Source: Blastocladiella emersonii ATCC 22665
Taxonomy: Eukaryota; Fungi; Blastocladiomycota
NCBI GenBank assembly: GCA_025594325.1
Contig: JANHCV010000003.1
Location: 2,356,001-2,420,000 of the forward strand
DNA length: 64,000 bases
Direction of reading: 5' to 3'
The notes beneath the pieces were generated by a model. The model had not been told where the DNA came from and made no database searches. It saw nothing but the letters and a program-made list of their open reading frames with translations. Below, in pieces: positions 2,251-35,162 of this stretch. Positions within the stretch are counted from its first letter, which is position 1; each line of letters begins with the position of its first letter. The position numbers and the translations under genes are program-made.

Positions 2251-3245
2251 TCAGCGGTCGCGGCGCGACGACGACCGGCGCGGGTCCTCGTCCATGCGGT
2301 CGGGCGGGGGCGCGTCGCCGAACCCTGCCGGCGGGGCAGCGGCGGGCGCGGGGTCGCGGTCGCTCCTGCGCTCGCCATCGCGTTCGCGGCGGCGGCTCTC
2401 GCGATCGCGGTCGCTGCGCTCGCCACGGTCGCGGTCGCGGTCGCGGTCGCTCCGGTCCCGCCGGCTGCTCTCGAGGTCACGGTCGCCACGGTCACTACGG
2501 TCGCGGTCGCCTGACCGGTCGCGGCGCGAGGAGGAACGGCCGGCGTCGCGGTCACGGTCGCGCGAGGAGCGGCGGCGGGAGGACGAGCGGCCACTGCCCA
2601 GGCCCTCGAGACCGCCGTGCTCGATGATCATAGCCTTCTGAGCCTCGTGGAGCTCGAGGCGGAGGGCGGGGTCCGGGTGCTTGAGGTGCATGAAGTTGCA
2701 GAACCCGCCGCGGTTGCACTCGCCGGCCTCGTGCTGTCGGCAGCAGGCTTCCCGGAAGTCGGTGACGGGGCACAGCTCGGCGTAGAGCGGCCAGCCGGCG
2801 TAGTAGCGGTTGTTGAGCTTGGCGACCATGGCGAGGGCGTCGCTCTCGTTGCGGTACCGCGCGTACACGTTGCCGACGAGGTGCTCGCCGACGTTGTCGC
2901 ACACGTGCATCTCCTCGAGGGCGCCGCCCAGCGCCAGCTCGCGGTACCAGTCCTCGTAGAACTGGTCAAAGTGGTCCTGCAGCTCCTGCGCCGTCATGAT
3001 CGACGTCGGGTCGTGCGCCGGGTTCTTGTACACGTTGCGGATCAGGATGGTGGGGGAGAAGGTCGGCTTCACGTGCTTGCGCGAGCACCGGTCGCCGTGC
3101 CGGCACGCCCCGATCTTGAAGTAGAAGGAGCAGTTGACCCTGTTGTTGAGAACGGGTTAGTGGGCTTCTCGGGCGGAAGCGAACACGCGGCGACCACGCA
3201 CTTGTCCTTCTCGGTGCCATAGATGCTCGCCAGGTAGTCGGCCAT
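2251..3245 (-). CDS. U2AF1: Splicing factor U2AF small subunit (U2AF35), 2 exons
   Basis: MADYLASIYGTEKDK|VNCSFYFKIGACRHGDRCSRKH (CCCH zinc finger), UHM with VCDNVGEHLVGNVY, second finger CRQHEAGECNRGGFCNFMH, RS/RD-rich tail. Confidence 0.97.
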
Positions 3246-3497
3246 GGTGGGTGCGCGGCGTTGCAGCGGGTGCCGTTCAGGGGCGTGCTCGATACGTTGC
3301 GTTGGGCGCGGTGCTGAGGAGGGGGGAGCGCGGAGAGCGCGCGCGGCCGCAAAGTCGTTCGGGCGACCCGAGAGGCGGTCACGACGCGCCGGTGTGACCG
3401 CGCCGCTCTCTTCCTGGCGTGGGCGTCGCCGTTGCGCTTCGCCACAGGCCTCCCCCTCTCTCCGATCCCCTCAGAGAGCACCCCCCACGTAGCAACC

Positions 3498-4164
3498 ATG
3501 GTAGACCTCATGCACACTCAATGAACCTGTCGCGCACGCGCTGACGCCCGCCCTCGGCTAGGCCAACTCGTCGTCCAAACGCATCGCCGCGGCGAACCGC
3601 ACGTTCCTGGCGACGCTGCTGCGCGTCATGGCCGGCGTCAACACGGTGACCATGGCCGTCCTGTTCCTGTGGTTCCGGTACCCGACGTTCGGCTGGGTGT
3701 GGCTGCCCTACTACGCGTCCATGGGCAGCTCGCTGGTCCTGTACCGCACGCTGTACGGCCTCGGCAACCCCTACACCAACTCGGCGGGTGAAGTCACCGT
3801 CAACGCCGACCTCGGCAGCCAGGGGCTCCACCAGTACATGTTCGACACGTTCTGCGTCGTGCTCGCCGCCCAGGTCCTCTCGTTGTTTACTGGCGTCGCG
3901 TGGTACCTGCTGCTCGTGGTGCGTTTCTCTTGCTCTTGAGGTATCCGACCCGTGTGCTGACCTCGATCCTCGTGGCAGATCCCCGGCTACGCCCTGTACC
4001 GCCTCGTCGGCTTCGTCCGCCCCTTCCTGCCCTCCATCTTTGGCAGCCGCAGCCGCGCCGCTCCCTCCATGGAGCAGTTTGCCGCCGCCGCGGCACCAGC
4101 GGCGCCCGCGGCCAAGTCTGCCGCCAAGCAGCAGCGCCAGCGCCCGCGCGTCGTCCGCGGCTAA
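3498..4164 (+). CDS. TMEM208: SND2/TMEM208 (DUF788) ER membrane protein, 3 exons
   Basis: M|ANSSSKRIAAANR...DLGSQGLHQYMFDTFCV...WYLLLV|IPGYALY...KQQRQR; matches the TMEM208/Snd2 pattern; the first exon is only the ATG. Confidence 0.85.
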
Positions 4165-4249
4165 CCCATCCCCTCACGAGTGGTTCATACAACAGCAAAT
4201 TCTACCACCCAATCTATCTCGCCTCCCACCCTCACCGCTCCAGTCGCTA

Positions 4250-5920
4250 CTACTCCCTGGGCCGCGTCACCACGAGCCGGCCGCGCTTGACGTCCTCGCG
4301 GACACTCCACCGGGGCTTGCTGTTACGCACCTTGTCGATCCACGCGCGGACGCCCGGGTCGCCGCTCTCGCACCCGGCCGCGTACACGAGCATCCAGCTC
4401 GTCCACGTCGTGCCGTTCCCCGAGTGCAGCGCCGCCTCGAGCATCTCGCGGATCTTCTCGGCCGGCGCCGTGTACGCGCACACCTTGATCCGCTTGACGC
4501 GCGCCAGGTGCGCCAGCACGCCCCCGCGCGTCATGGCGATCCACGTGTGCCCGGCGACCTCGAGGTCCGTCGCCTTACACGCCGCCGCGACCGAGGTCGG
4601 GACGGGCGGCCCCGTCGTGCTGGACGTCATGGGCGCCGTGTCCTGCGCGCACACGTACAGCTTGGTCACGCCGCGCGGGATCCCGGCAAACGCCTCGGCG
4701 GCCGTGCGCACCTGGACGGGGGATACGATCGCGACGTGCCGCAGCCGCGCCGCGTCGAGCGCGCCCAGGATCGTGGACGCGGGGGTCCCGCCGGCGACGG
4801 GCGGCGCGAGGACCAGCGACTCGGGCTGCGCGCGGCCGAGGACACGCAGCCACGACGTCGACAGCGGGCTGTGCGCGGCGAACAGGAAGTGCCGCAGCAC
4901 GCGCGGCTCGACGCCCGCCGCGTCGCGCGCGAGATCCTGTTTCGCGGCCGAGCTCGACCGCGACCCCGCTGCGTCCGCGTCGACGGGCGATGTCACGAGG
5001 TGCAGACTGGCCAGGTGCGGGAGGCGGAGCAGGCCGAGCAGCTCCCCCGCCGTCATGAACCCGGGCGTTACCAGGAACACGGACTTGAGCGCCGCGAGCG
5101 CGGGCCACGTCCACATCGCCGCGGGGAGCGGCGGGCACGTTTCGCGCGGCGGCGGGGCGTCCGAGTCCTCGCGCACGATGCGCAGGGACGTCGGCACCAG
5201 CGGCGCCGCGCCGTCGACGATCCCCTTGACGAGCGTCGCGAGCCCCGCCGCGTCCTGGACCACGCGGTACTCGACGTCGACCGCGAACGCGACGGGCACG
5301 CCGTCCGTGCGCCCGGCCGTCGCGATGCGGGCCGCTGCCCGCCCAATCGCGGTGCCCAGCGTCGCCCACAGCTGCACCCCCGTCTGCGCCGCGATCTCGA
5401 GCCCGCGCACGCGCACCCGGACGCGCGCGAGGTCGCGGAACTGCGCCTCGATCCCCTCGACGCGCGAGTACGTGTGCTGCGGCGGGTGCGCCGGGTTCGC
5501 GGGCGAGTCCTGGTCGAGCGGCACCTCGAGCACCACGTTGCGCTCGCGGAAATGGCGCTCCGGCGCGTCGCGCAGGCGGATCCGCAGGGACCCCGGCGCG
5601 CTCCCCGACATGGGGACGCCCGTCAGGACGCGGGTCCGCGTGTCGAGCGCGACGGCGTGCGCGAGCGCGTGTAGGCGCCGGCACACGTGGCCGATGCCAG
5701 AGAGCGGGAGGACTTGTGCGCTGTTGGCGTGGCTGATAAAGTCGGGCGAGGTGATGAGGAACCGGCAGATGAGTTTGAGCGCGCGGTCCGGCAGGTCGAG
5801 GAGGGGCACGGGCGACTGCAGCGTCCGGTCGAGCGTCGCCGACTTGAGGTCCGACGCGCTGCCCGTCGCCGACGTGCTCGCCAACGCGATGCCGTGGTCC
5901 GAGGAAGCGACCGGACACAT
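4250..5920 (-). CDS. F-box-like / degenerate LRR protein, array member F1
   Basis: Intronless ORF of about 556 aa with LLDLPDRALKLICRFL (F-box-like). It shares blocks with neighbouring ORFs (e.g. VLKGIVDGAAPLVPTSL-type block vs VLDGIFTHAPSLVPSSF; LRHVAI vs LRHIEL). Confidence 0.6.
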   Translation of the reverse strand: MCPVASSDHGIALASTSATGSASDLKSATLDRTLQSPVPLLDLPDRALKLICRFLITSPDFISHANSAQVLPLSGIGHVCRRLHALAHAVALDTRTRVLTGVPMSGSAPGSLRIRLRDAPERHFRERNVVLEVPLDQDSPANPAHPPQHTYSRVEGIEAQFRDLARVRVRVRGLEIAAQTGVQLWATLGTAIGRAAARIATAGRTDGVPVAFAVDVEYRVVQDAAGLATLVKGIVDGAAPLVPTSLRIVREDSDAPPPRETCPPLPAAMWTWPALAALKSVFLVTPGFMTAGELLGLLRLPHLASLHLVTSPVDADAAGSRSSSAAKQDLARDAAGVEPRVLRHFLFAAHSPLSTSWLRVLGRAQPESLVLAPPVAGGTPASTILGALDAARLRHVAIVSPVQVRTAAEAFAGIPRGVTKLYVCAQDTAPMTSSTTGPPVPTSVAAACKATDLEVAGHTWIAMTRGGVLAHLARVKRIKVCAYTAPAEKIREMLEAALHSGNGTTWTSWMLVYAAGCESGDPGVRAWIDKVRNSKPRWSVREDVKRGRLVVTRPRE

Positions 5921-29787: not shown

Positions 29788-31356
29788 TCACGCGAGTTGA
29801 GTCTACCAGGTGCGAGGTTAGCTGGAAGTCGCACGACCATGCGGCGAGAGAAGAACGGACCATCTCGAGGTTCAGCTTGATCACAATCTTGTTGATGGTG
29901 GCCAGCAGCACGCGCACCTGCTTGGTATCCGTCGCGCACGTGTTGTGCACGTACAGCTTGCGCTCGCGCTTGCGGTTCAGGTAGTAGAACTTCTTGGCCC
30001 TGCACGTCCGCACTCGTGGTGAGCCTCGAGCTTCACCGAACCCAGCCCCGCGAACACGTACAGGAATTTGAGCACATGCTCGATCCTGTCCTCTTTGGGC
30101 GGCGCCGGCGCAAAGTCGGGGAAGTGCGCCGCAAACGCGGCCGGATCGAACTTCGTCTTGAGCAGGTCGATCTTGTTGAGGAACAGGATGATGGCCACCT
30201 TCTCGAGCAACGTGTTGTTCACCACCGAGTCGAATACCATCATGCTTTCGAGCAACCGGTTCGTCGTCGGGTCCTCGGCCAGCACCTGGTCGTACGACGA
30301 CGTCGACACCACAAACAGGATCCTACACGTCGCGTCGAGGGTGAGACCGCATTCCGGATGGCCGACCTCGGTGCACGTACGCGTTGGCGTCGTCAAAAAA
30401 CGGGATCTACACAAACACTACAAGTCAGTTCGCATCCCCCAAAGACCCATGGTTGCGCCGTCGCGTACCCACGCGTGCCGCTCGCTCCGCGACCCGGGCA
30501 CGTCGTACACCTTGTAGTTGAGCCCGTGCATCTGCAGCCGCGTCTCGCTGCACGCCAGCGTCTCCTGGCGCGCGTGGATGATGTCGTCGTTGGTGATCTC
30601 GCACGCCGGCGACATGAGGCGCGTGATGTGCTCGAACAGGCTACATGTGGCGAGGTTAGTCGCGTGCTTTGGGGAGGGCGGATGGCGAACGCACTAGTCG
30701 ATGGCATCGAGCACGCCGCCAAACTCGTGCCGCCGGTCGAACGCGACCTGCAGCGCCGGATCCTTGGCGAGCGCGACCACGGCCGCGACCCACTCGTCGG
30801 GCAGCGTCGGTGGCGGCTTGCGGTACGTCGACTCGGGCAGGGCGAGCAGCAGGTCGGCGTGGGGCTACACGGGAGCACGGTGGGCGAGTCAGTCGACGCG
30901 GGGATCATCGGTAGCAGAAGCGAACGTACACTGCTCTCGGCCGGATTCTCGAGCGCGAGCCCAATCGACTTCATCCCGTGGAGCAGCTCGCACACGCAGC
31001 GCACGATGTTGCCCTGCAGCACGCGACGCCACTCGCTCGTCTCGTAGTCGTTGAGGTGCCCGTTCGAGATGAGCTTCATCTGCTTCCTACAGGGTCGTCG
31101 CGCGCGCGCGTTAGTTGCCGGTCATCGTGGAACCGAGTCGGAGTGGAACGTACAACACGGTCGACTTGCCGCTCTCGGACGTCCCTAGAAACCGTCCGAG
31201 TGGTCAGCACCGGTCAAGAGTCCCGCGGCGCGCGCCGCGCAACGTACCGAGCAGCAAGATGCGGCGCGTGTCGCCCGTTGACTTGGCCTCATCGCGGAGC
31301 TGCTTGTCGATCTCGGCCGACCGCTTGCGCTCCTCGGCGGAGCCCCGGCTGAACAT
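29788..31356 (-). CDS. Heterotrimeric G-protein alpha subunit, divergent, multi-exon
   Basis: RSAEIDKQL, ILLLGTSESGKSTVLKQMKLI, DDIIHARQET, YDVPGSRSERHAW, IILFLNKIDLL, TCATDT; the start codon is uncertain. Confidence 0.9.
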
Positions 31357-31654
31357 GGCGACGAGCCGGCGCACGGGGGTCCCCGGGCGGCTGCGGTTCT
31401 CGGCGTTGGTCGGGGTGGAGGAGCCGGGCGAGTAGGGCGCGAGGGCCTCGGTCGAGACCAGCAAGGAGGCGCGCGAGCCTTCGGCTTCGGGGGCAACGAC
31501 AGCCAGGTCGGCTTCGCTGCTGTGCTGCGACGACGACAGCTTGGGCGACGGGGGTGGGGGCGCGAGGGGACGTTGTAGCGGGTGAGCCGACGCGGATCAG
31601 CTCAGCTCGAGTGCAAGTGATGATTCATGAGCGCCGAGCAGGAGGAGCAGCGTG

Positions 31655-31729
31655 GAGCGCGAGCGGAAAAGTTGAGGAGGAGGGAGGGAGCGCGAGCGGA
31701 AAAGTTGAGGAGGAGGGAGGGAGCGCGAG
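31655..31729. repeat. 33-bp tandem repeat, about 2.3 copies
   Basis: GAGCGCGAGCGGAAAAGTTGAGGAGGAGGGAGG at 31655 and 31688, partial third copy at 31721. Confidence 0.85.
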
Positions 31730-31887
31730 ATGAGGCCGGTTCCGGCCAGCCGGCACGTCGCGCGTGGCCAGCACAGAGCACGCGGGAGACATGGCCGGGC
31801 CGCGTCCGTCTCCCAGCTGCCCGCACCCGGTTGCGGAACTGGAGACAAAGGGAGCGGATCTCGGATGTAGACGTATATATATTTGGA

Positions 31888-33753
31888 TCATATCGACGAC
31901 GTGTCGTACATGCCTTCGCGCATCAGCCGTGGCCATAGGGTCACGCGGCTCGCCGGCCCATACTCCTCGCGCGCGGCCTGGATCCGCTTCGCCTCCGCAG
32001 ACTCGCTCGACTCGGCGTCGGTGTCGAACCAGCGGTAGACGGCGCCCTTGACGAGACTGCCGGAAGCGGAGCTCGACGCCGTTTCGCCGCTGAGCTTGGC
32101 CAGGTGCAGGAGCAGCGCGGGCCGCTTGGCCTTGACGACGTCGAGGTGCTCGTTCAGCCGCTGCGTCGTGCACTCGAGCTCGGTCTGCAGCTGCGCGATG
32201 CTCTCGGCGAGGTGGGCCTTGGTCAGGTCGTCGCCGACCTCGGTCAGATGAAACGAGAGGAACGCGCATGTGCGGTACTTGGAGTGCTCGGTGATGGTGA
32301 GCCGGAGCCCGCGGCGCGGGCAGTGCGCGGACCCGAACCCGGTGCCCGTCGCATCCTCGCTGGTCGCCTGCGCCTGGATCGAGTACCGGCCCTTGGAGTG
32401 CGACTCGCGGATGCATGCCGAGATCACGCCCACGAACCCGCCGAGGCCTTCGTCTGGGAGGAACCCGAACGCGGGGAGCCCGCCGTGGTCGCGGACCAAC
32501 ACCCGCCACCGCTCCCGGTCAATGTCCTCGGTCGCCATGAGGAACAGCGGGTCGCCTTGCGCGGCGATGGCGAGCCGGAAGCGCGGCTCGACGGCGGAAG
32601 TCTTGGGCTCGCTCGCGGACCGAGTTGGGGTGAAGGCGAGGATGCGGAACTCGAGCCGCGGAGGCAGCTGATCAGGGACGGGATCGGCGAGCAGCAGCGG
32701 CATGGCGAAGATGACCTCTACAAATCGCGACAAGAGCGTGAGTACTGGCCCGCTCGGATTCGTGGTTAGGAAACGTTCGTACGCTTGTTATGCCAGTCGG
32801 TCTTGTCAAAGAGTCGAGCAGCGGCAGGGATAGACGGCGAAGGCGGCTCGCTTCGGTCACACACCACGTTGAGAGCCACGCGCGTCGACTCGAACCACCG
32901 TTGCGCCTTGGTCGATTGCTTTTGCGTCGAAGAGATGGACAGGAGCAAGGTAGGCGCGTGCACCTGGATCACGTTGAGTAGTCGAGCGAGTCGAGCGCGC
33001 GCCTGGTCCACGCGTTCCTACGAGGCACTCGAGGGTGAGTGGGTGGGTTCATCGCAGGGGGATTGGCGGCACCTACCCGGAGTACTGCATGTGACGCGAT
33101 GAGCGAGCCCTTCATCTCTTCCCACCGCGACGGTCGAAAATCGAGCGAGATAAGCGGGACTGTTCGGACGCGCGAGAAGGTCTCCGTGAAGACGAGCGAG
33201 CAGATGCCCTCGCGCTCGTACATGAGGAGCTTGGCTTGGTAGCTAGATCGCACAAGCGTCAGTGGAAGTCCGACATTGCCCAGCAACAGATGACGTGCCA
33301 GTCCGGGTCGCTCCGACACTGCTCAACGAGCTCACATAGCAGCTTTCCGAAGTTGCGGAACCCCTCCTCACCCTTTAGATTGAGCGACTGGGACTCGCAG
33401 AGCGTGCGGAAGCTGAAGGGAGTGCAGAGGAAAGTGTAGTTCCAGAAAAAGTCGTCGGCGCGAGCGAGCTGCACCGGGTAGTACTGCGGGAACTCGCAGT
33501 TGGTCTAGAATCGTGTACGCGAGAGTTAGCCTCGAGCGTGTGAAGCCACCCAAGCGAGGCGTACCAGATAGCCAACGTCAATGGTGAACGCCTCGCGGCG
33601 CCGTTTGGACTTGCTCTCCGCCGAGCCCATGAACGGGAACTCGTGGACGTCGACGTCGATACGATACAGTCGCCTTGGAGGCACTATGTGGACAAGAGCA
33701 CTCACTGTTGAGCGTGTGCCTCGCAGCAATCAAAGATGACCATTACGGCGTAC
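31888..33753 (-). CDS. SAS6L: SAS-6-like (SAS6L) protein with two tandem SAS-6 N-terminal head modules, multi-exon
   Basis: Module 1: ADDFFWNY...LCESQSL...LVEQC...VFTETFSRVRTVPLISL...VIQVHAPTLLL. Module 2: QGDPLFL...ACIRE...ITEHSKYRTCAFLSF...HLAESIAQL...VVKAKRPALLLHL. Both resemble the SAS-6 head (TDDTDPFFLY...VVETNPFKHLTHLSL) with only short coils. Confidence 0.65.
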
Positions 33754-34165
33754 CAAACGCACGGCCGCGGTTCGCCTGATGCACCGTCAGCGTGTGCTTG
33801 GCTTCTGAGAGAGTTTTGAAGAATGCGACATCCCGCCTGGCAAAAGTCGAGACGCCTGCCCCGCGATCCCGCCTCACAGGGCCTGCGTGGGCTGAACCGG
33901 ACTTGATACCCGCCGCCGGCCGAGTCGCGACCTTCATTGTGTATGCATGTGGTGACTTTGACATTTTCAGCATAGCGGAGGGACAGGGTGGCGCAGCTGT
34001 TCGCGGCGCGCGGGTCGAGGGTCGCGACTTTTCGACGCGTCGCGCAATCATGTGAGCCCTCGTGATGTCTCGCAGCGGATCTTGTCTCCGCTTTTCGCGG
34101 TTCGCGCCCACCCCCTCTGCAACCACCCACTTCATGTAACTTTGTGGGCGCCGCGACTTGGCGCA

Positions 34166-35162
34166 ATGGACATCCCGGCTCGCGTTGACGAAGATCTCTA
34201 CCTCGGCTCGTTGACTTCGCTCGAATGGGATGGGCTCGAGCGCGAGTACGACATTCGAGCCCTTCTGAGCATGGTTCCTGTGCCAGACGCGTGTTCGATC
34301 TCGGAAAAGAAAGTCATTGCCATCGACGATGTACCTGAGCAGGACCTCCTCTCGCACCTCAACGAAGCGCTCGAGTTCCTGCGCGAAGCCAAGGCGCAGT
34401 CGACGCCTCTACTTGTCATCTGTGCAGCCGGCGTGTCTCGATCTGCGTCTGTCGTTGCTGCCTCCCTTATGGCTTCTCATGGACTCTCGCTCGACGAGGC
34501 CCTCATGAAGATCCGGTCAGTTCGGCCGGAAGTTGGGTAGGTACGTCAGCGCCGTCCAATCACCCGAACCGAGCACTTTCTCACACCGATACACGCTGCT
34601 CAGACCTAACCCGGGATTCCTCTACCAGCTCCACGTGTTCCAGCAGCTTCTCGCTTCCACACCGGGATCACCGATCGTGTCGCCGCGCCATCCGCTGGTC
34701 CAGCACACCAAGGCGCTACTCGCGGCCCAATCGCTTCACCCGAGCTCACTCGTCTTCCCGTCGGACTTGACTCCGTCGCCGCACTTGCTCGAACTGCAAC
34801 AGTCGACTTGCATGTTCACTTGCGCCTCATGCCGCAGCCCGGTCTTCACTTCCGCTCACGTCATGCCGCACGAGCACGCGAAGGGGTGCCGGTTCGAGGC
34901 CGCGTCGACCCTTTCCATCTTCCCGCCGACCTGGATGACGCAGCGGCTGGCTCGCGGCGATCCCTCAACGTGGACGGGAAAGCTTTCGTGCCCATGGCCG
35001 GCGCGATCCAGCAGTAAGACCAAGCCGGCGTCGTGCCTTGCCCAGCTGGGTCACTTTTGGTGGACGCGGTCACCGTGTCCTGGCGGTTGCGATTCGAGCA
35101 GCGTTCCCCGCGTGATCGTTCGCCGTGCGGCTGTGCTCGAGCCTATCGGTGCGAACATCTAA
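34166..35162 (+). CDS. YVH1: Dual-specificity phosphatase with C-terminal zinc-binding domain (Yvh1/DUSP12-like), 2 exons
   Basis: LYLGS, IDDVPEQDLLSH, VICAAGVSRSASVV, PNPGFLYQL, then CASCR...GKLSCP...C...LGHF.W...C. Confidence 0.8.

What the first reader, a model, noticed from the sequence alone, without database searches (positions are those of the whole stretch)
31888..33753. One gene appears to encode two tandem SAS-6-like head modules
Seen: two divergent SAS-6-type heads, each followed by a short coil ending V-x-x-x-x-P-x-LLL. A 65-nt GT-AG intron (32718-32782, phase 1, AAG C|AG GTC) joins them in frame, and module 1 has no separate stop if spliced. Module 2 has Tyr (EHSKYR) at the position of the head-to-head Phe of SAS-6 (ETNPFK), while module 1 has ETFSRVR. 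Known: SAS-6 builds the 9-fold cartwheel by alternating head-head and coil-coil contacts; SAS6L proteins have one head and a short coil and localise to the flagellar transition zone or conoid region. Inference: a covalently linked pseudo-heterodimer could polymerise with different geometry, perhaps in a zoospore kinetosome-associated structure. I know of no described double-head SAS-6 protein.
Basis: partly seen in the sequence, partly recalled or inferred. Interest (0 to 1): 0.75.

Follow-up and report, generated by a model that had tools for sequence, protein, structure and literature searches.

The report
Two-headed SAS6-like gene in Blastocladiella
This water fungus has one six-exon gene whose protein carries two copies, in a row, of the head-plus-short-stalk unit of SAS6-like flagellar scaffold proteins; this layout is conserved across swimming fungi and I found no description of it in the literature.

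Summary
On the minus strand of this Blastocladiella emersonii window lies one gene of six exons (ATG 33937, or 33973/33964, to stop 31888; 579-591 aa).

- **Module 1:** it matches Pfam SAS-6_N.
- **Module 2:** it has no Pfam hit, but it is homologous to module 1 by hhalign (98% and 96% probability). Its profile hits Toxoplasma SAS6L and Leishmania SAS-6 in the PDB. In an AlphaFold model of the Coelomomyces ortholog it folds as an XRCC4/SAS-6-superfamily head.
a 5' exon (33754-33937) was missed. Module 1 carries Val, not nothing, at the head-to-head position.

That this is one gene rests on comparison, not transcripts. Both modules lie in the same order in eight zoosporic fungi. In Catenaria a single stop-free frame of about 626 codons spans both modules. 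In three chytrids one exon bridges them. A tree puts the duplication before the chytrid-blastoclad split.

The public model KAI9184610.1 is a chimera with the neighbouring G-alpha gene.

The gene is a new variant (an internal tandem duplication) of the known SAS6L family. How it polymerises, and where it sits in the cell, are inferred only. The scan had not found this on other DNA.

The parts
33754..33937 (-). Exon 1. Start ATG at 33935-33937; further in-frame ATGs at 33962-33964 and 33971-33973. Contains the LSEAK motif at 33797-33811.
   Evidence: The frame is open upstream of the donor at 33753. The intron position and the LSEAK motif are shared with Allomyces P0002 and Coelomomyces P0003.
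33684..33753 (-). Intron 1: 70 nt, GTACGC...TAG, phase 1.
   Evidence: Allomyces and Coelomomyces have an intron at the same position (..TF|APPRR..AL|EPPPK).
33565..33683 (-). Exon 2: first strands of head 1.
   Evidence: Aligns to the orthologs. The matching residues of P0003 are strands E42-52 and E65-73 in the AlphaFold model.
33505..33564 (-). Intron 2: 60 nt, GTACGC...CTAAC...TAG, phase 0.
   Evidence: The position is conserved in the orthologs (..GYL|T).
33299..33504 (-). Exon 3: core of head 1, with the PISA-like stretch at about 33325-33456.
   Evidence: This exon alone matches Pfam SAS-6_N positions 43-100, E 1.8e-4, 22.1 bits.
33243..33298 (-). Intron 3: 56 nt, GC-AG (GCACGT...CTGAC...TAG), phase 2.
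   Evidence: The position is conserved in the orthologs (..P..Y|). The public model P0001 uses the same splice.
33077..33242 (-). Exon 4: last strands and hairpin of head 1 (hairpin-tip Val codon 33167-33169), and the start of stalk 1.
   Evidence: Aligns to the orthologs and to Toxoplasma SAS6L. P0001 wrongly skips the last 31 codons of this exon.
33018..33076 (-). Intron 4: 59 nt, GTAGGT...CTCAC...TAG, phase 0.
   Evidence: A. macrogynus P0013 has a junction at the aligned position (..FLT|KTLAQ).
32783..33017 (-). Exon 5: rest of stalk 1 with P-T-L-L-L at 32940-32954, then the inter-module linker with a conserved Trp.
   Evidence: The distance from the hairpin Glu to the motif Pro is 57 residues in all six species measured.
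32718..32782 (-).
   Evidence: It has the same donor, branch and acceptor style as the other four introns. Unspliced, the frame stops after five codons. P0001 uses the same splice.
31888..32717 (-). Exon 6, holding module 2:
- End of the linker.
- Head 2, about 32245-32664, with hairpin-tip Tyr codon 32275-32277.
- Stalk 2, 32107-32244, with P-A-L-L-L at 32107-32121.
- Tail with the LWP..REG.Y motif at 31906-31938.
- Stop codon at 31888-31890.
   Evidence: - Single ORF.
- hhalign against module 1: 98.1% and 95.7% probability.
- PDB profile hits: 9y9z_20 at E 1.3e-6 and 4ckp_A at E 0.003.
- The C-terminal motif is shared with Catenaria P0004 and Allomyces P0013 and P0016.

Best explanation
This is one six-exon gene of Blastocladiella emersonii. 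It encodes a protein of 579-591 residues, an internally duplicated member of the SAS6-like (SAS6L) family.

Layout: a short N-terminal leader, then twice the same unit. Each unit is a SAS-6_N/XRCC4-type head followed by a helical stalk of about 45 residues ending in P-x-LLL. A linker of about 65 residues joins the two units, and the tail ends in a conserved LWP..REG.Y motif.

The duplication is old. It predates the split of Chytridiomycota and Blastocladiomycota, and both copies are under purifying selection.

Inferred mechanism:
- Toxoplasma SAS6L has one head. Its stalk-mediated homodimers line up through head-to-head contacts into linear arrays on tubulin fibres.
- By analogy, the two stalks of the fungal protein, which are equal in length and in register, pair within one chain. 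This would make a covalent pseudo-heterodimer.
- Both heads keep a hydrophobic residue at the hairpin tip (Val in head 1, Tyr in head 2). Head-to-head contacts between chains would then string these units into a filament on microtubules of the zoospore flagellar apparatus.

Shown here: gene structure, homology of both modules, conservation. Inferred: pairing of the stalks within one chain, filament formation, location in the cell.
For: Gene model:
- The joined coding sequence is 1740 nt with a single terminal stop.
- The five introns are 56-70 nt. Donors are GTACG (three), GTAGG and GCACG. All acceptors are TAG, with CTNAC-like branch sites 17-24 nt upstream.

One gene:
- Orthologs with both modules in the same order occur in Allomyces javanicus, A. 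macrogynus, Coelomomyces, Catenaria, Dinochytrium, Phlyctochytrium and Polychytrium.
- In Catenaria locus L009 one frame runs without a stop from about 2603 to 4481, through head 1, stalk 1, the linker, head 2 and stalk 2.
- In the three chytrids one exon encodes stalk 1, the linker and the first strand of head 2.
- In the other blastoclad orthologs (Allomyces, Coelomomyces), module 2 has no Met near its start.
- The own genome holds no other copy of either module.

Module 1 is a SAS-6_N head:
- Pfam scores are 22.1 bits for exon 3 alone, 31.9 bits for P0001 and 37 bits for P0003, against a cut-off of 25.
- The best PDB profile hit is Toxoplasma SAS6L at E 5e-8.
- VIA-align gives Z 17 (rmsd 2.0-3.3 A) to SAS-6 and SAS6L heads.

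Module 2 is homologous:
- hhalign against module 1 gives 98.1% probability, E 6.5e-14, and 95.7%, E 9.6e-9.
- PDB profile hits are 9y9z_20 at E 1.3e-6, Leishmania SAS-6 at E 0.003 and further SAS-6 chains.
- In the AlphaFold model of P0003, head 2 has pLDDT 70-86 and the same order of strands and helices as head 1.
- VIA-align gives Z 12.0 to the CCDC61 head and Z 9-10 to XRCC4.
- The top ESM Atlas look-alikes are SAS-6_N clusters.

Age and selection:
- The tree splits module 1 from module 2 with 100/99 support, and both phyla appear on each side.
- dN/dS between the two Allomyces species is 0.07-0.24 in both modules.

Mechanism:
- The distance from the hairpin Glu to the motif Pro is 57 residues in module 1 in six of six species. 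It is 56 residues in module 2 in four of six. The hydrophobic positions are in register.
- The module 2 stalk aligns without gaps to the Toxoplasma SAS6L stalk and its PSLLLHL motif.
- The model's pTM of 0.57, with 27% of residues disordered, suggests a defined arrangement of the two modules (my inference).
- Toxoplasma SAS6L homodimers form linear arrays with SAS-6-like interfaces (PMC12819142).
Against: - No transcript, EST or protein evidence could be reached. The public annotation was made ab initio (PMC9730499). Word searches found no transcript-derived protein.
- Module 2 has no Pfam hit of its own.
- The structural evidence comes from an ortholog that is 25-35% identical, modelled from only 11 sequences at mean pLDDT 65.5. 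The B. emersonii spliced protein itself was not folded.
- In VIA-align, SAS-6 chains were all assigned to head 1. Head 2 is therefore matched directly only to CCDC61, XRCC4 and PAXX.
- Model coordinates and PAE were not available, so stalk pairing within one chain was not seen.
- B. emersonii module 2 has an in-frame ATG (32701-32703) just after the junction intron.
Confidence: 0.85

Rival explanations
1. There are two separate, adjacent paralogous SAS6L genes. The junction intron is not spliced. Module 1 ends at the TAA five codons into it, and module 2 starts at the ATG at 32701-32703.
For: Left unspliced, there is a stop after ..HNK plus five codons, and an in-frame ATG 60 nt further on. 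All public models that join the modules are gene predictions. The B. emersonii annotation used no RNA data.
Against: - Only about 60 nt would separate the two genes.
- In Catenaria both modules lie in one stop-free frame of about 626 codons.
- In three chytrids one exon runs from stalk 1 into the first strand of head 2.
- Allomyces and Coelomomyces have no Met at the start of module 2.
- The intron has the same length, donor, branch site and TAG acceptor as the other four, and it keeps the frame.
- The order and orientation are conserved across two phyla.
Confidence: 0.05
2. It is one gene, but the two stalks do not pair with each other. Each stalk pairs with the same stalk of another chain. 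The protein then acts as a bivalent cross-linker and builds branched or sheet-like lattices, not a single file of pseudo-dimers.
For: Each module keeps the full dimerising unit of head, stalk and P-x-LLL, under purifying selection. The linker of about 45-65 residues is long and poorly predicted (pLDDT 29-42), so it would allow the modules to act independently.
Against: The two stalks have stayed the same length to within one residue, with hydrophobic positions in register, since the duplication. A pTM of 0.57 for a chain with 131 of 486 residues disordered suggests that AlphaFold places the two modules relative to each other (indirect).
Confidence: 0.3
3. It is one gene, but head 2 has lost the ability to polymerise. 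It now serves as an adaptor that binds another partner (for example tubulin, as CCDC61 does), and only head 1 makes SAS6L-type contacts.
For: Module 2 is the more divergent copy. It has no Pfam hit and long branches in the tree, and its closest separate structural matches are CCDC61 and XRCC4. It also has a module-specific conserved GF.P.EG.GG loop that module 1 lacks.
Against: An aromatic residue is kept at the hairpin tip in every species: Tyr or Phe, aligned to Leishmania SAS-6 Phe257. The stalk and P-x-LLL motif match Toxoplasma SAS6L without gaps.
Confidence: 0.15

Closest known systems
SAS6L (SAS6-like) of Toxoplasma gondii (TGME49_301420, 263 aa; PDB 9Y9Z) and Trypanosoma brucei
   Same: - It has a SAS-6_N head followed by a short stalk, not a long coiled-coil tail.
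- The stalk ends in the same P-x-LLL(H)L motif at the same distance from the hairpin.
- It is the best PDB hit for both module profiles (E 5e-8 and 1.3e-6) and the best Foldseek and VIA-align match.
- Like SAS6L elsewhere, the gene sits in a flagellated organism that also has canonical SAS-6 (PMC3697468).
   Different: [quoted passage not shown] The fungal protein carries two diverged head-and-stalk units in one chain, plus an N-terminal leader and a conserved C-terminal motif. Its location and polymer form are unknown.
Canonical SAS-6 (cartwheel protein; e.g. PDB 2Y3V, 3Q0X, 4CKP)
   Same: The head fold is the same (Z about 17, rmsd about 2 A, for head 1). A hydrophobic residue sits at the hairpin tip used for head-to-head contacts. 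The stalk begins right after the head.
   Different: The fungal protein has no coiled-coil spoke of about 300 residues. Sequence similarity is weaker than to SAS6L. B. emersonii has a separate canonical SAS-6 on contig 17. SAS-6 has one head per chain.
CCDC61/VFL3 and the XRCC4, XLF and PAXX heads (XRCC4 superfamily)
   Same: They share the head-plus-stalk fold. Head 2 of the model aligns to the CCDC61 head at Z 12.0 (rmsd 3.3 A, 113 residues) and to XRCC4 at Z 9-10. CCDC61_N clusters appear among the ESM Atlas look-alikes.
   Different: No sequence-level match to these families was found. The resemblance is at fold level only. None of them is known to me as a tandem two-head chain.

Membership tests
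SAS6L (SAS6-like) | Conserved head domain shared with SAS-6 (Pfam SAS-6_N, includes the PISA motif) | tested here: met
   - Module 1: Pfam gives 31.9 bits for P0001 and 37 bits for P0003 against a cut-off of 25; exon 3 alone gives 22.1 bits.
- Module 2: no direct Pfam hit, but it is homologous to module 1 by hhalign.
- Module 2 also hits SAS6L and SAS-6 chains in the PDB.
SAS6L (SAS6-like) | No long coiled-coil tail; only a short stalk after the head | tested here: met
   Each stalk is about 45 residues, with 56-57 residues from the hairpin Glu to the motif Pro. In the model the helices are 185-220 and 414-445. The stalk aligns without gaps to the Toxoplasma SAS6L stalk and its PSLLLHL motif.
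SAS6L (SAS6-like) | Groups with SAS6L and not with SAS-6 in phylogeny | tested here: inconclusive
   Toxoplasma SAS6L is the best PDB hit for both module profiles, and canonical SAS-6 is far weaker or absent. No tree including a broad set of SAS-6 and SAS6L sequences could be built, because those sequences were not retrievable here.
SAS6L (SAS6-like) | Architecture as described: one head per chain, little else | tested here: not met
   The protein has two head-and-stalk units per chain. This is conserved in eight zoosporic fungi.
SAS6L (SAS6-like) | Forms filaments or linear arrays; sits at the flagellar basal plate or conoid fibres | not testable with these tools
   This is known for Toxoplasma and Trypanosoma (PMC3697468, PMC12819142). 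There are no data for fungi.
Canonical SAS-6 | Head followed by about 300 residues of coiled coil that forms the cartwheel spoke | tested here: not met
   The stalks are short and end at a Pro motif. A separate canonical SAS-6 lies at G000:C17:1734831-1735124, with a Pfam score of 63.8 bits.
Canonical SAS-6 | Hydrophobic residue at the hairpin tip that plugs into the neighbouring head (Phe131 in zebrafish, Ile154 in C. elegans, Phe257 in Leishmania) | tested here: met
   In module 2, Tyr aligns with Leishmania Phe257; the orthologs have Tyr or Phe. In module 1, Val aligns with the Tyr of Toxoplasma SAS6L; the orthologs have Ile or Tyr. The receiving pocket was not examined.
XRCC4 superfamily (fold level) | Beta-sandwich head with a helix-turn-helix insert, followed by a long helix | tested here: met
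   In the AlphaFold model of ortholog P0003, both heads show four strands, two helices, three strands and a long helix. Head 1 matches SAS-6 at Z 17. Head 2 matches CCDC61 at Z 12 and XRCC4 and PAXX at Z 9-10.

The most novel reading that the evidence does not exclude
The fungal SAS6L is a natural covalent pseudo-heterodimer. Its two stalks pair within one chain, and its two non-identical heads make only head 1 to head 2 contacts between chains. This would give a polar filament with a two-head repeat, which no known SAS-6-family polymer has. The filament would pattern a microtubule structure specific to fungal zoospores, such as the basal plate or the kinetosome-anchored microtubule cone. It would show how duplication and fusion can re-set the geometry of a SAS-6-type self-assembling scaffold.
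Probability: 0.3. Interest if true: 0.7.

Novelty: new variant of a known kind. Interest (0 to 1): 0.55.

Why it matters
- **Geometry of the assembly.** SAS-6-family proteins are the textbook case of a protein whose self-assembly geometry sets the shape of an organelle. Homodimers linked head to head give the nine-fold cartwheel in SAS-6. In Toxoplasma SAS6L, as shown in late 2025, they give straight arrays on tubulin fibres. A chain that carries two diverged heads and two matched stalks fixes the partners 1:1 and breaks the symmetry of the repeating unit. It is a natural experiment on how head and stalk contacts dictate polymer form.
- **Age of the duplication.** The fusion has been kept since before chytrids and blastoclads diverged, so it is functional.
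- **Which structure it marks.** It gives a specific protein to localise in zoospores, where the role of SAS6L is unknown.
- **Annotation.** The public B. emersonii model is a chimera with a G-alpha gene. The Catenaria and Allomyces models are truncated or mis-spliced. This is probably why the architecture went unnoticed.

Tried and rejected
- **Pfam on module 2 alone:** no meaningful hit.
- **Word-index protein search with module 2 (155-490 aa):** nothing.
- **Word-index search with the SAS6L part of P0001 (482-1535 aa):** only P0001 itself. So no transcript-derived protein of this gene could be found.
- **AlphaFold of module 2 without an alignment:** uninformative, pLDDT 40.
- **Start at ATG 33743:** rejected. 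It opens 13 codons, and the only GT..AG that could join it to exon 2 is 22 nt.
- **Start at the Met used by P0001 (MGSAESK):** rejected as the true start. It lies inside head 1 and leaves out conserved exon 1 and the first strand.
- **P0001's 3' splice into the G-alpha gene:** rejected. The ORF's own end carries the LWP..REG.Y motif conserved in Catenaria and Allomyces.
- **Two-gene reading:** rejected on comparative grounds.
- **Search for more copies:** I searched the own genome for a second, single-head SAS6L and found none.
- **Joined protein not searched:** the joined spliced protein of B. emersonii was not sent to any search or fold. Exons were searched by reference. The joined coding sequence was only checked locally for length, frame and stops.
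Full report
**What is at the locus**

The finding lies on the minus strand. The genome is Blastocladiella emersonii ATCC 22665. A 99%-identical public protein, P0001 (KAI9184610.1), carries that name.

Reading the three minus-strand frames with donor and acceptor lists gives a six-exon model:

| Exon | Coordinates |
|---|---|
| 1 | 33937-33754 |
| 2 | 33683-33565 |
| 3 | 33504-33299 |
| 4 | 33242-33077 |
| 5 | 33017-32783 |
| 6 | 32717-31888 |

- Joined, these are 1740 nt with one terminal stop, giving 579 aa.
- There are in-frame ATGs at 33964 and 33973, which would give 588 or 591 aa.
- The five introns are 56-70 nt. Donors are GTACG (three), GTAGG and GCACG, so intron 3 is GC-AG. Each has a CTNAC-like branch site 17-24 nt before the acceptor, and each ends in TAG.
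- The joined protein was not sent to any search or fold. Exons were searched by reference, and the joined coding sequence was only checked locally for frame and stops.

One more exon lies upstream.
- That exon's LSEAK motif, and the intron position after it, are shared with Allomyces and Coelomomyces.
- The public model P0001 has the same junction splice, but it is wrong in three ways. It starts inside head 1, skips the last 31 codons of exon 4, and splices its 3' end into the neighbouring G-alpha gene.
- The true C-terminus is the ORF's own end. Its LWP..REG.Y motif recurs in Catenaria and Allomyces.

**Are both halves SAS-6-type heads?**

Module 1: yes.
- Exon 3 alone scores 22.1 bits on Pfam SAS-6_N (E 1.8e-4). 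P0001 scores 31.9 bits and the Coelomomyces ortholog 37 bits, against a cut-off of 25.

Module 2 has no Pfam hit, but four lines agree.
- **Profile against profile.** Module 2 against module 1 gives 98.1% probability, E 6.5e-14, over 146-192 columns covering head and stalk in my own alignments. With the tool's alignments it gives 95.7%, E 9.6e-9.
- **PDB profile search.** The module 2 profile finds Toxoplasma SAS6L (9y9z_20, E 1.3e-6), Leishmania SAS-6 (4ckp, E 0.003) and two further SAS-6 entries. Everything below them is coiled-coil noise.
- **Structure.**
  - An AlphaFold model of the Coelomomyces ortholog, built from 11 sequences, has mean pLDDT 65.5 and both heads at 70-89. Both heads show the same order of elements: four strands, two helices, three strands and a long helix.
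  - Foldseek's top hits are the SAS6L chains of 9Y9Z (E 1.5e-9), followed by SAS-6 heads.
  - VIA-align places SAS-6 and SAS6L chains on head 1 (Z about 17).
  - CCDC61, XRCC4 and PAXX chains fall on head 2 (Z 12.0 to 9).
- **ESM Atlas.** The nearest look-alikes of module 2 are SAS-6_N clusters. This is a lead only.

The module 1 profile also has Toxoplasma SAS6L as its only significant PDB hit (E 5e-8). The protein is therefore SAS6L-like and not SAS-6 proper. A separate canonical SAS-6 lies on contig 17.

**One gene or two?**

No transcript evidence could be reached. The public annotation was ab initio, and no transcript-derived protein turned up. The case is comparative, and I think it is strong.

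- A full HMMER scan with module 2 found proteins of 486-682 aa that match in their C-terminal half. They come from Allomyces javanicus, Coelomomyces lativittatus, Dinochytrium and Phlyctochytrium, plus a Catenaria fragment.
- A profile search added A. macrogynus and Polychytrium. All of these carry module 1 upstream.
- Most of their gene models also place an intron near the junction. Two observations do not depend on such an intron:
  - In Catenaria locus L009, one frame is free of stops from about 2603 to 4481. It runs through head 1, stalk 1, the linker, head 2, stalk 2 and the conserved C-terminus.
  - In all three chytrids, a single exon encodes stalk 1, its P-x-LL motif, the linker and the first strand of head 2.
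- In the Allomyces and Coelomomyces orthologs, module 2 has no Met near its start.
- The B. emersonii genome has no other copy of either module.

**Age and selection**

- In a maximum-likelihood tree, the module 1 and module 2 sequences separate with 100/99 support. Chytrid and blastoclad sequences appear on both sides. The duplication therefore predates the split of the two phyla.
- Between the two Allomyces species, dN/dS is 0.07-0.24 in exons of both modules.

**How it probably works**

- SAS6L was described as a single-head SAS-6 paralog that forms filaments when overexpressed. It sits at the trypanosome basal plate and at the Toxoplasma conoid (PMC3697468).
- The 2025 cryo-EM structure shows Toxoplasma SAS6L (263 aa) as homodimers in linear arrays along conoid fibres, with SAS-6-like interfaces (PMC12819142).
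- The fungal protein keeps the parts needed for both contacts, twice over:
  - The hairpin-tip residue is Tyr in head 2, aligned to Leishmania Phe257, and Val in head 1, aligned to the Toxoplasma Tyr.
  - The distance from the hairpin Glu to the motif Pro is 57 residues in module 1 in six of six species. It is 56 residues in module 2 in four of six. The hydrophobic positions are in register.
  - The linker of 45-65 residues is long enough to fold back along a stalk of about 50 A.
- A pTM of 0.57 for a model in which 27% of residues are disordered suggests that the two modules are placed relative to each other. I could not inspect coordinates or PAE.

My best reading is a pseudo-heterodimer paired within one chain, which polymerises head to head on a microtubule structure of the zoospore. 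The alternatives are stalk pairing between chains, making a cross-linked lattice, or a head 2 that has become an adaptor. None of these was tested.

**Novelty**

- The family is known, and its presence in a chytrid was noted in 2013. It was then described as having little outside the one conserved domain (PMC3697468).
- Full-text searches found no paper that mentions SAS6L together with chytrids or blastoclads, beyond that 2013 note, and none that describes a two-headed architecture.
- I rate this a new variant of a known kind. It is of moderate interest to people who work on centriole and flagellar scaffolds.

Noticed in passing
window 29788-33937 (minus strand): The public gene model KAI9184610.1 (P0001, 877 aa, named 'guanine nucleotide-binding protein subunit alpha') is a chimera. 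It holds a truncated two-module SAS6L, lacking exon 1 and the last 31 codons of exon 4, spliced onto the downstream G-alpha gene.
   Followed up: partly
window 31654-31729: A perfect 33-bp tandem repeat of 2.3 copies lies in the spacer between the SAS6L stop codon and the G-alpha gene. Its function is unknown.
   Followed up: no
window 33243-33298: A GC-AG intron (donor GCACGT) lies at a position conserved in all orthologs. In addition, all five introns of this gene end in TAG.
   Followed up: partly
window 33938-34168: A plus-strand gene starts at about 34168 and runs in the opposite direction. It encodes a dual-specificity-phosphatase-like protein; a C-x-x-G-x-x-R-S motif is visible in the ORF at 34052-34540. 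Only about 195-230 bp separate the two start codons, so the genes probably share a bidirectional promoter.
   Followed up: no
L009:2402-4481 (Catenaria anguillulae, MCFL01000013.1): The annotated protein ORZ37337.1 (P0004, 160 aa, 'partial') covers only the end of the gene. The locus holds a stop-free frame of about 626 codons that contains both SAS6L modules.
   Followed up: yes
L002 and other Allomyces javanicus contigs (P0002, P0014, P0016): Allomyces javanicus has at least three models of this family. Two lie on the same 56.8-kb contig (GGF32_002597, module 1 only, and GGF32_002599). One lies on another contig (GGF32_005005, module 2 only). They may be duplicated copies with fragmented models. 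P0002 itself has a 7-codon micro-exon at the junction and a truncated C-terminus.
   Followed up: no
L005:5916-6737 and L008:5144-6975: In both Dinochytrium and Phlyctochytrium the gene directly downstream of the two-module SAS6L, on the opposite strand, encodes an Arf/Ras-type small GTPase. In B. emersonii the downstream neighbour is a G-alpha. This is probably coincidence but was not examined.
   Followed up: no
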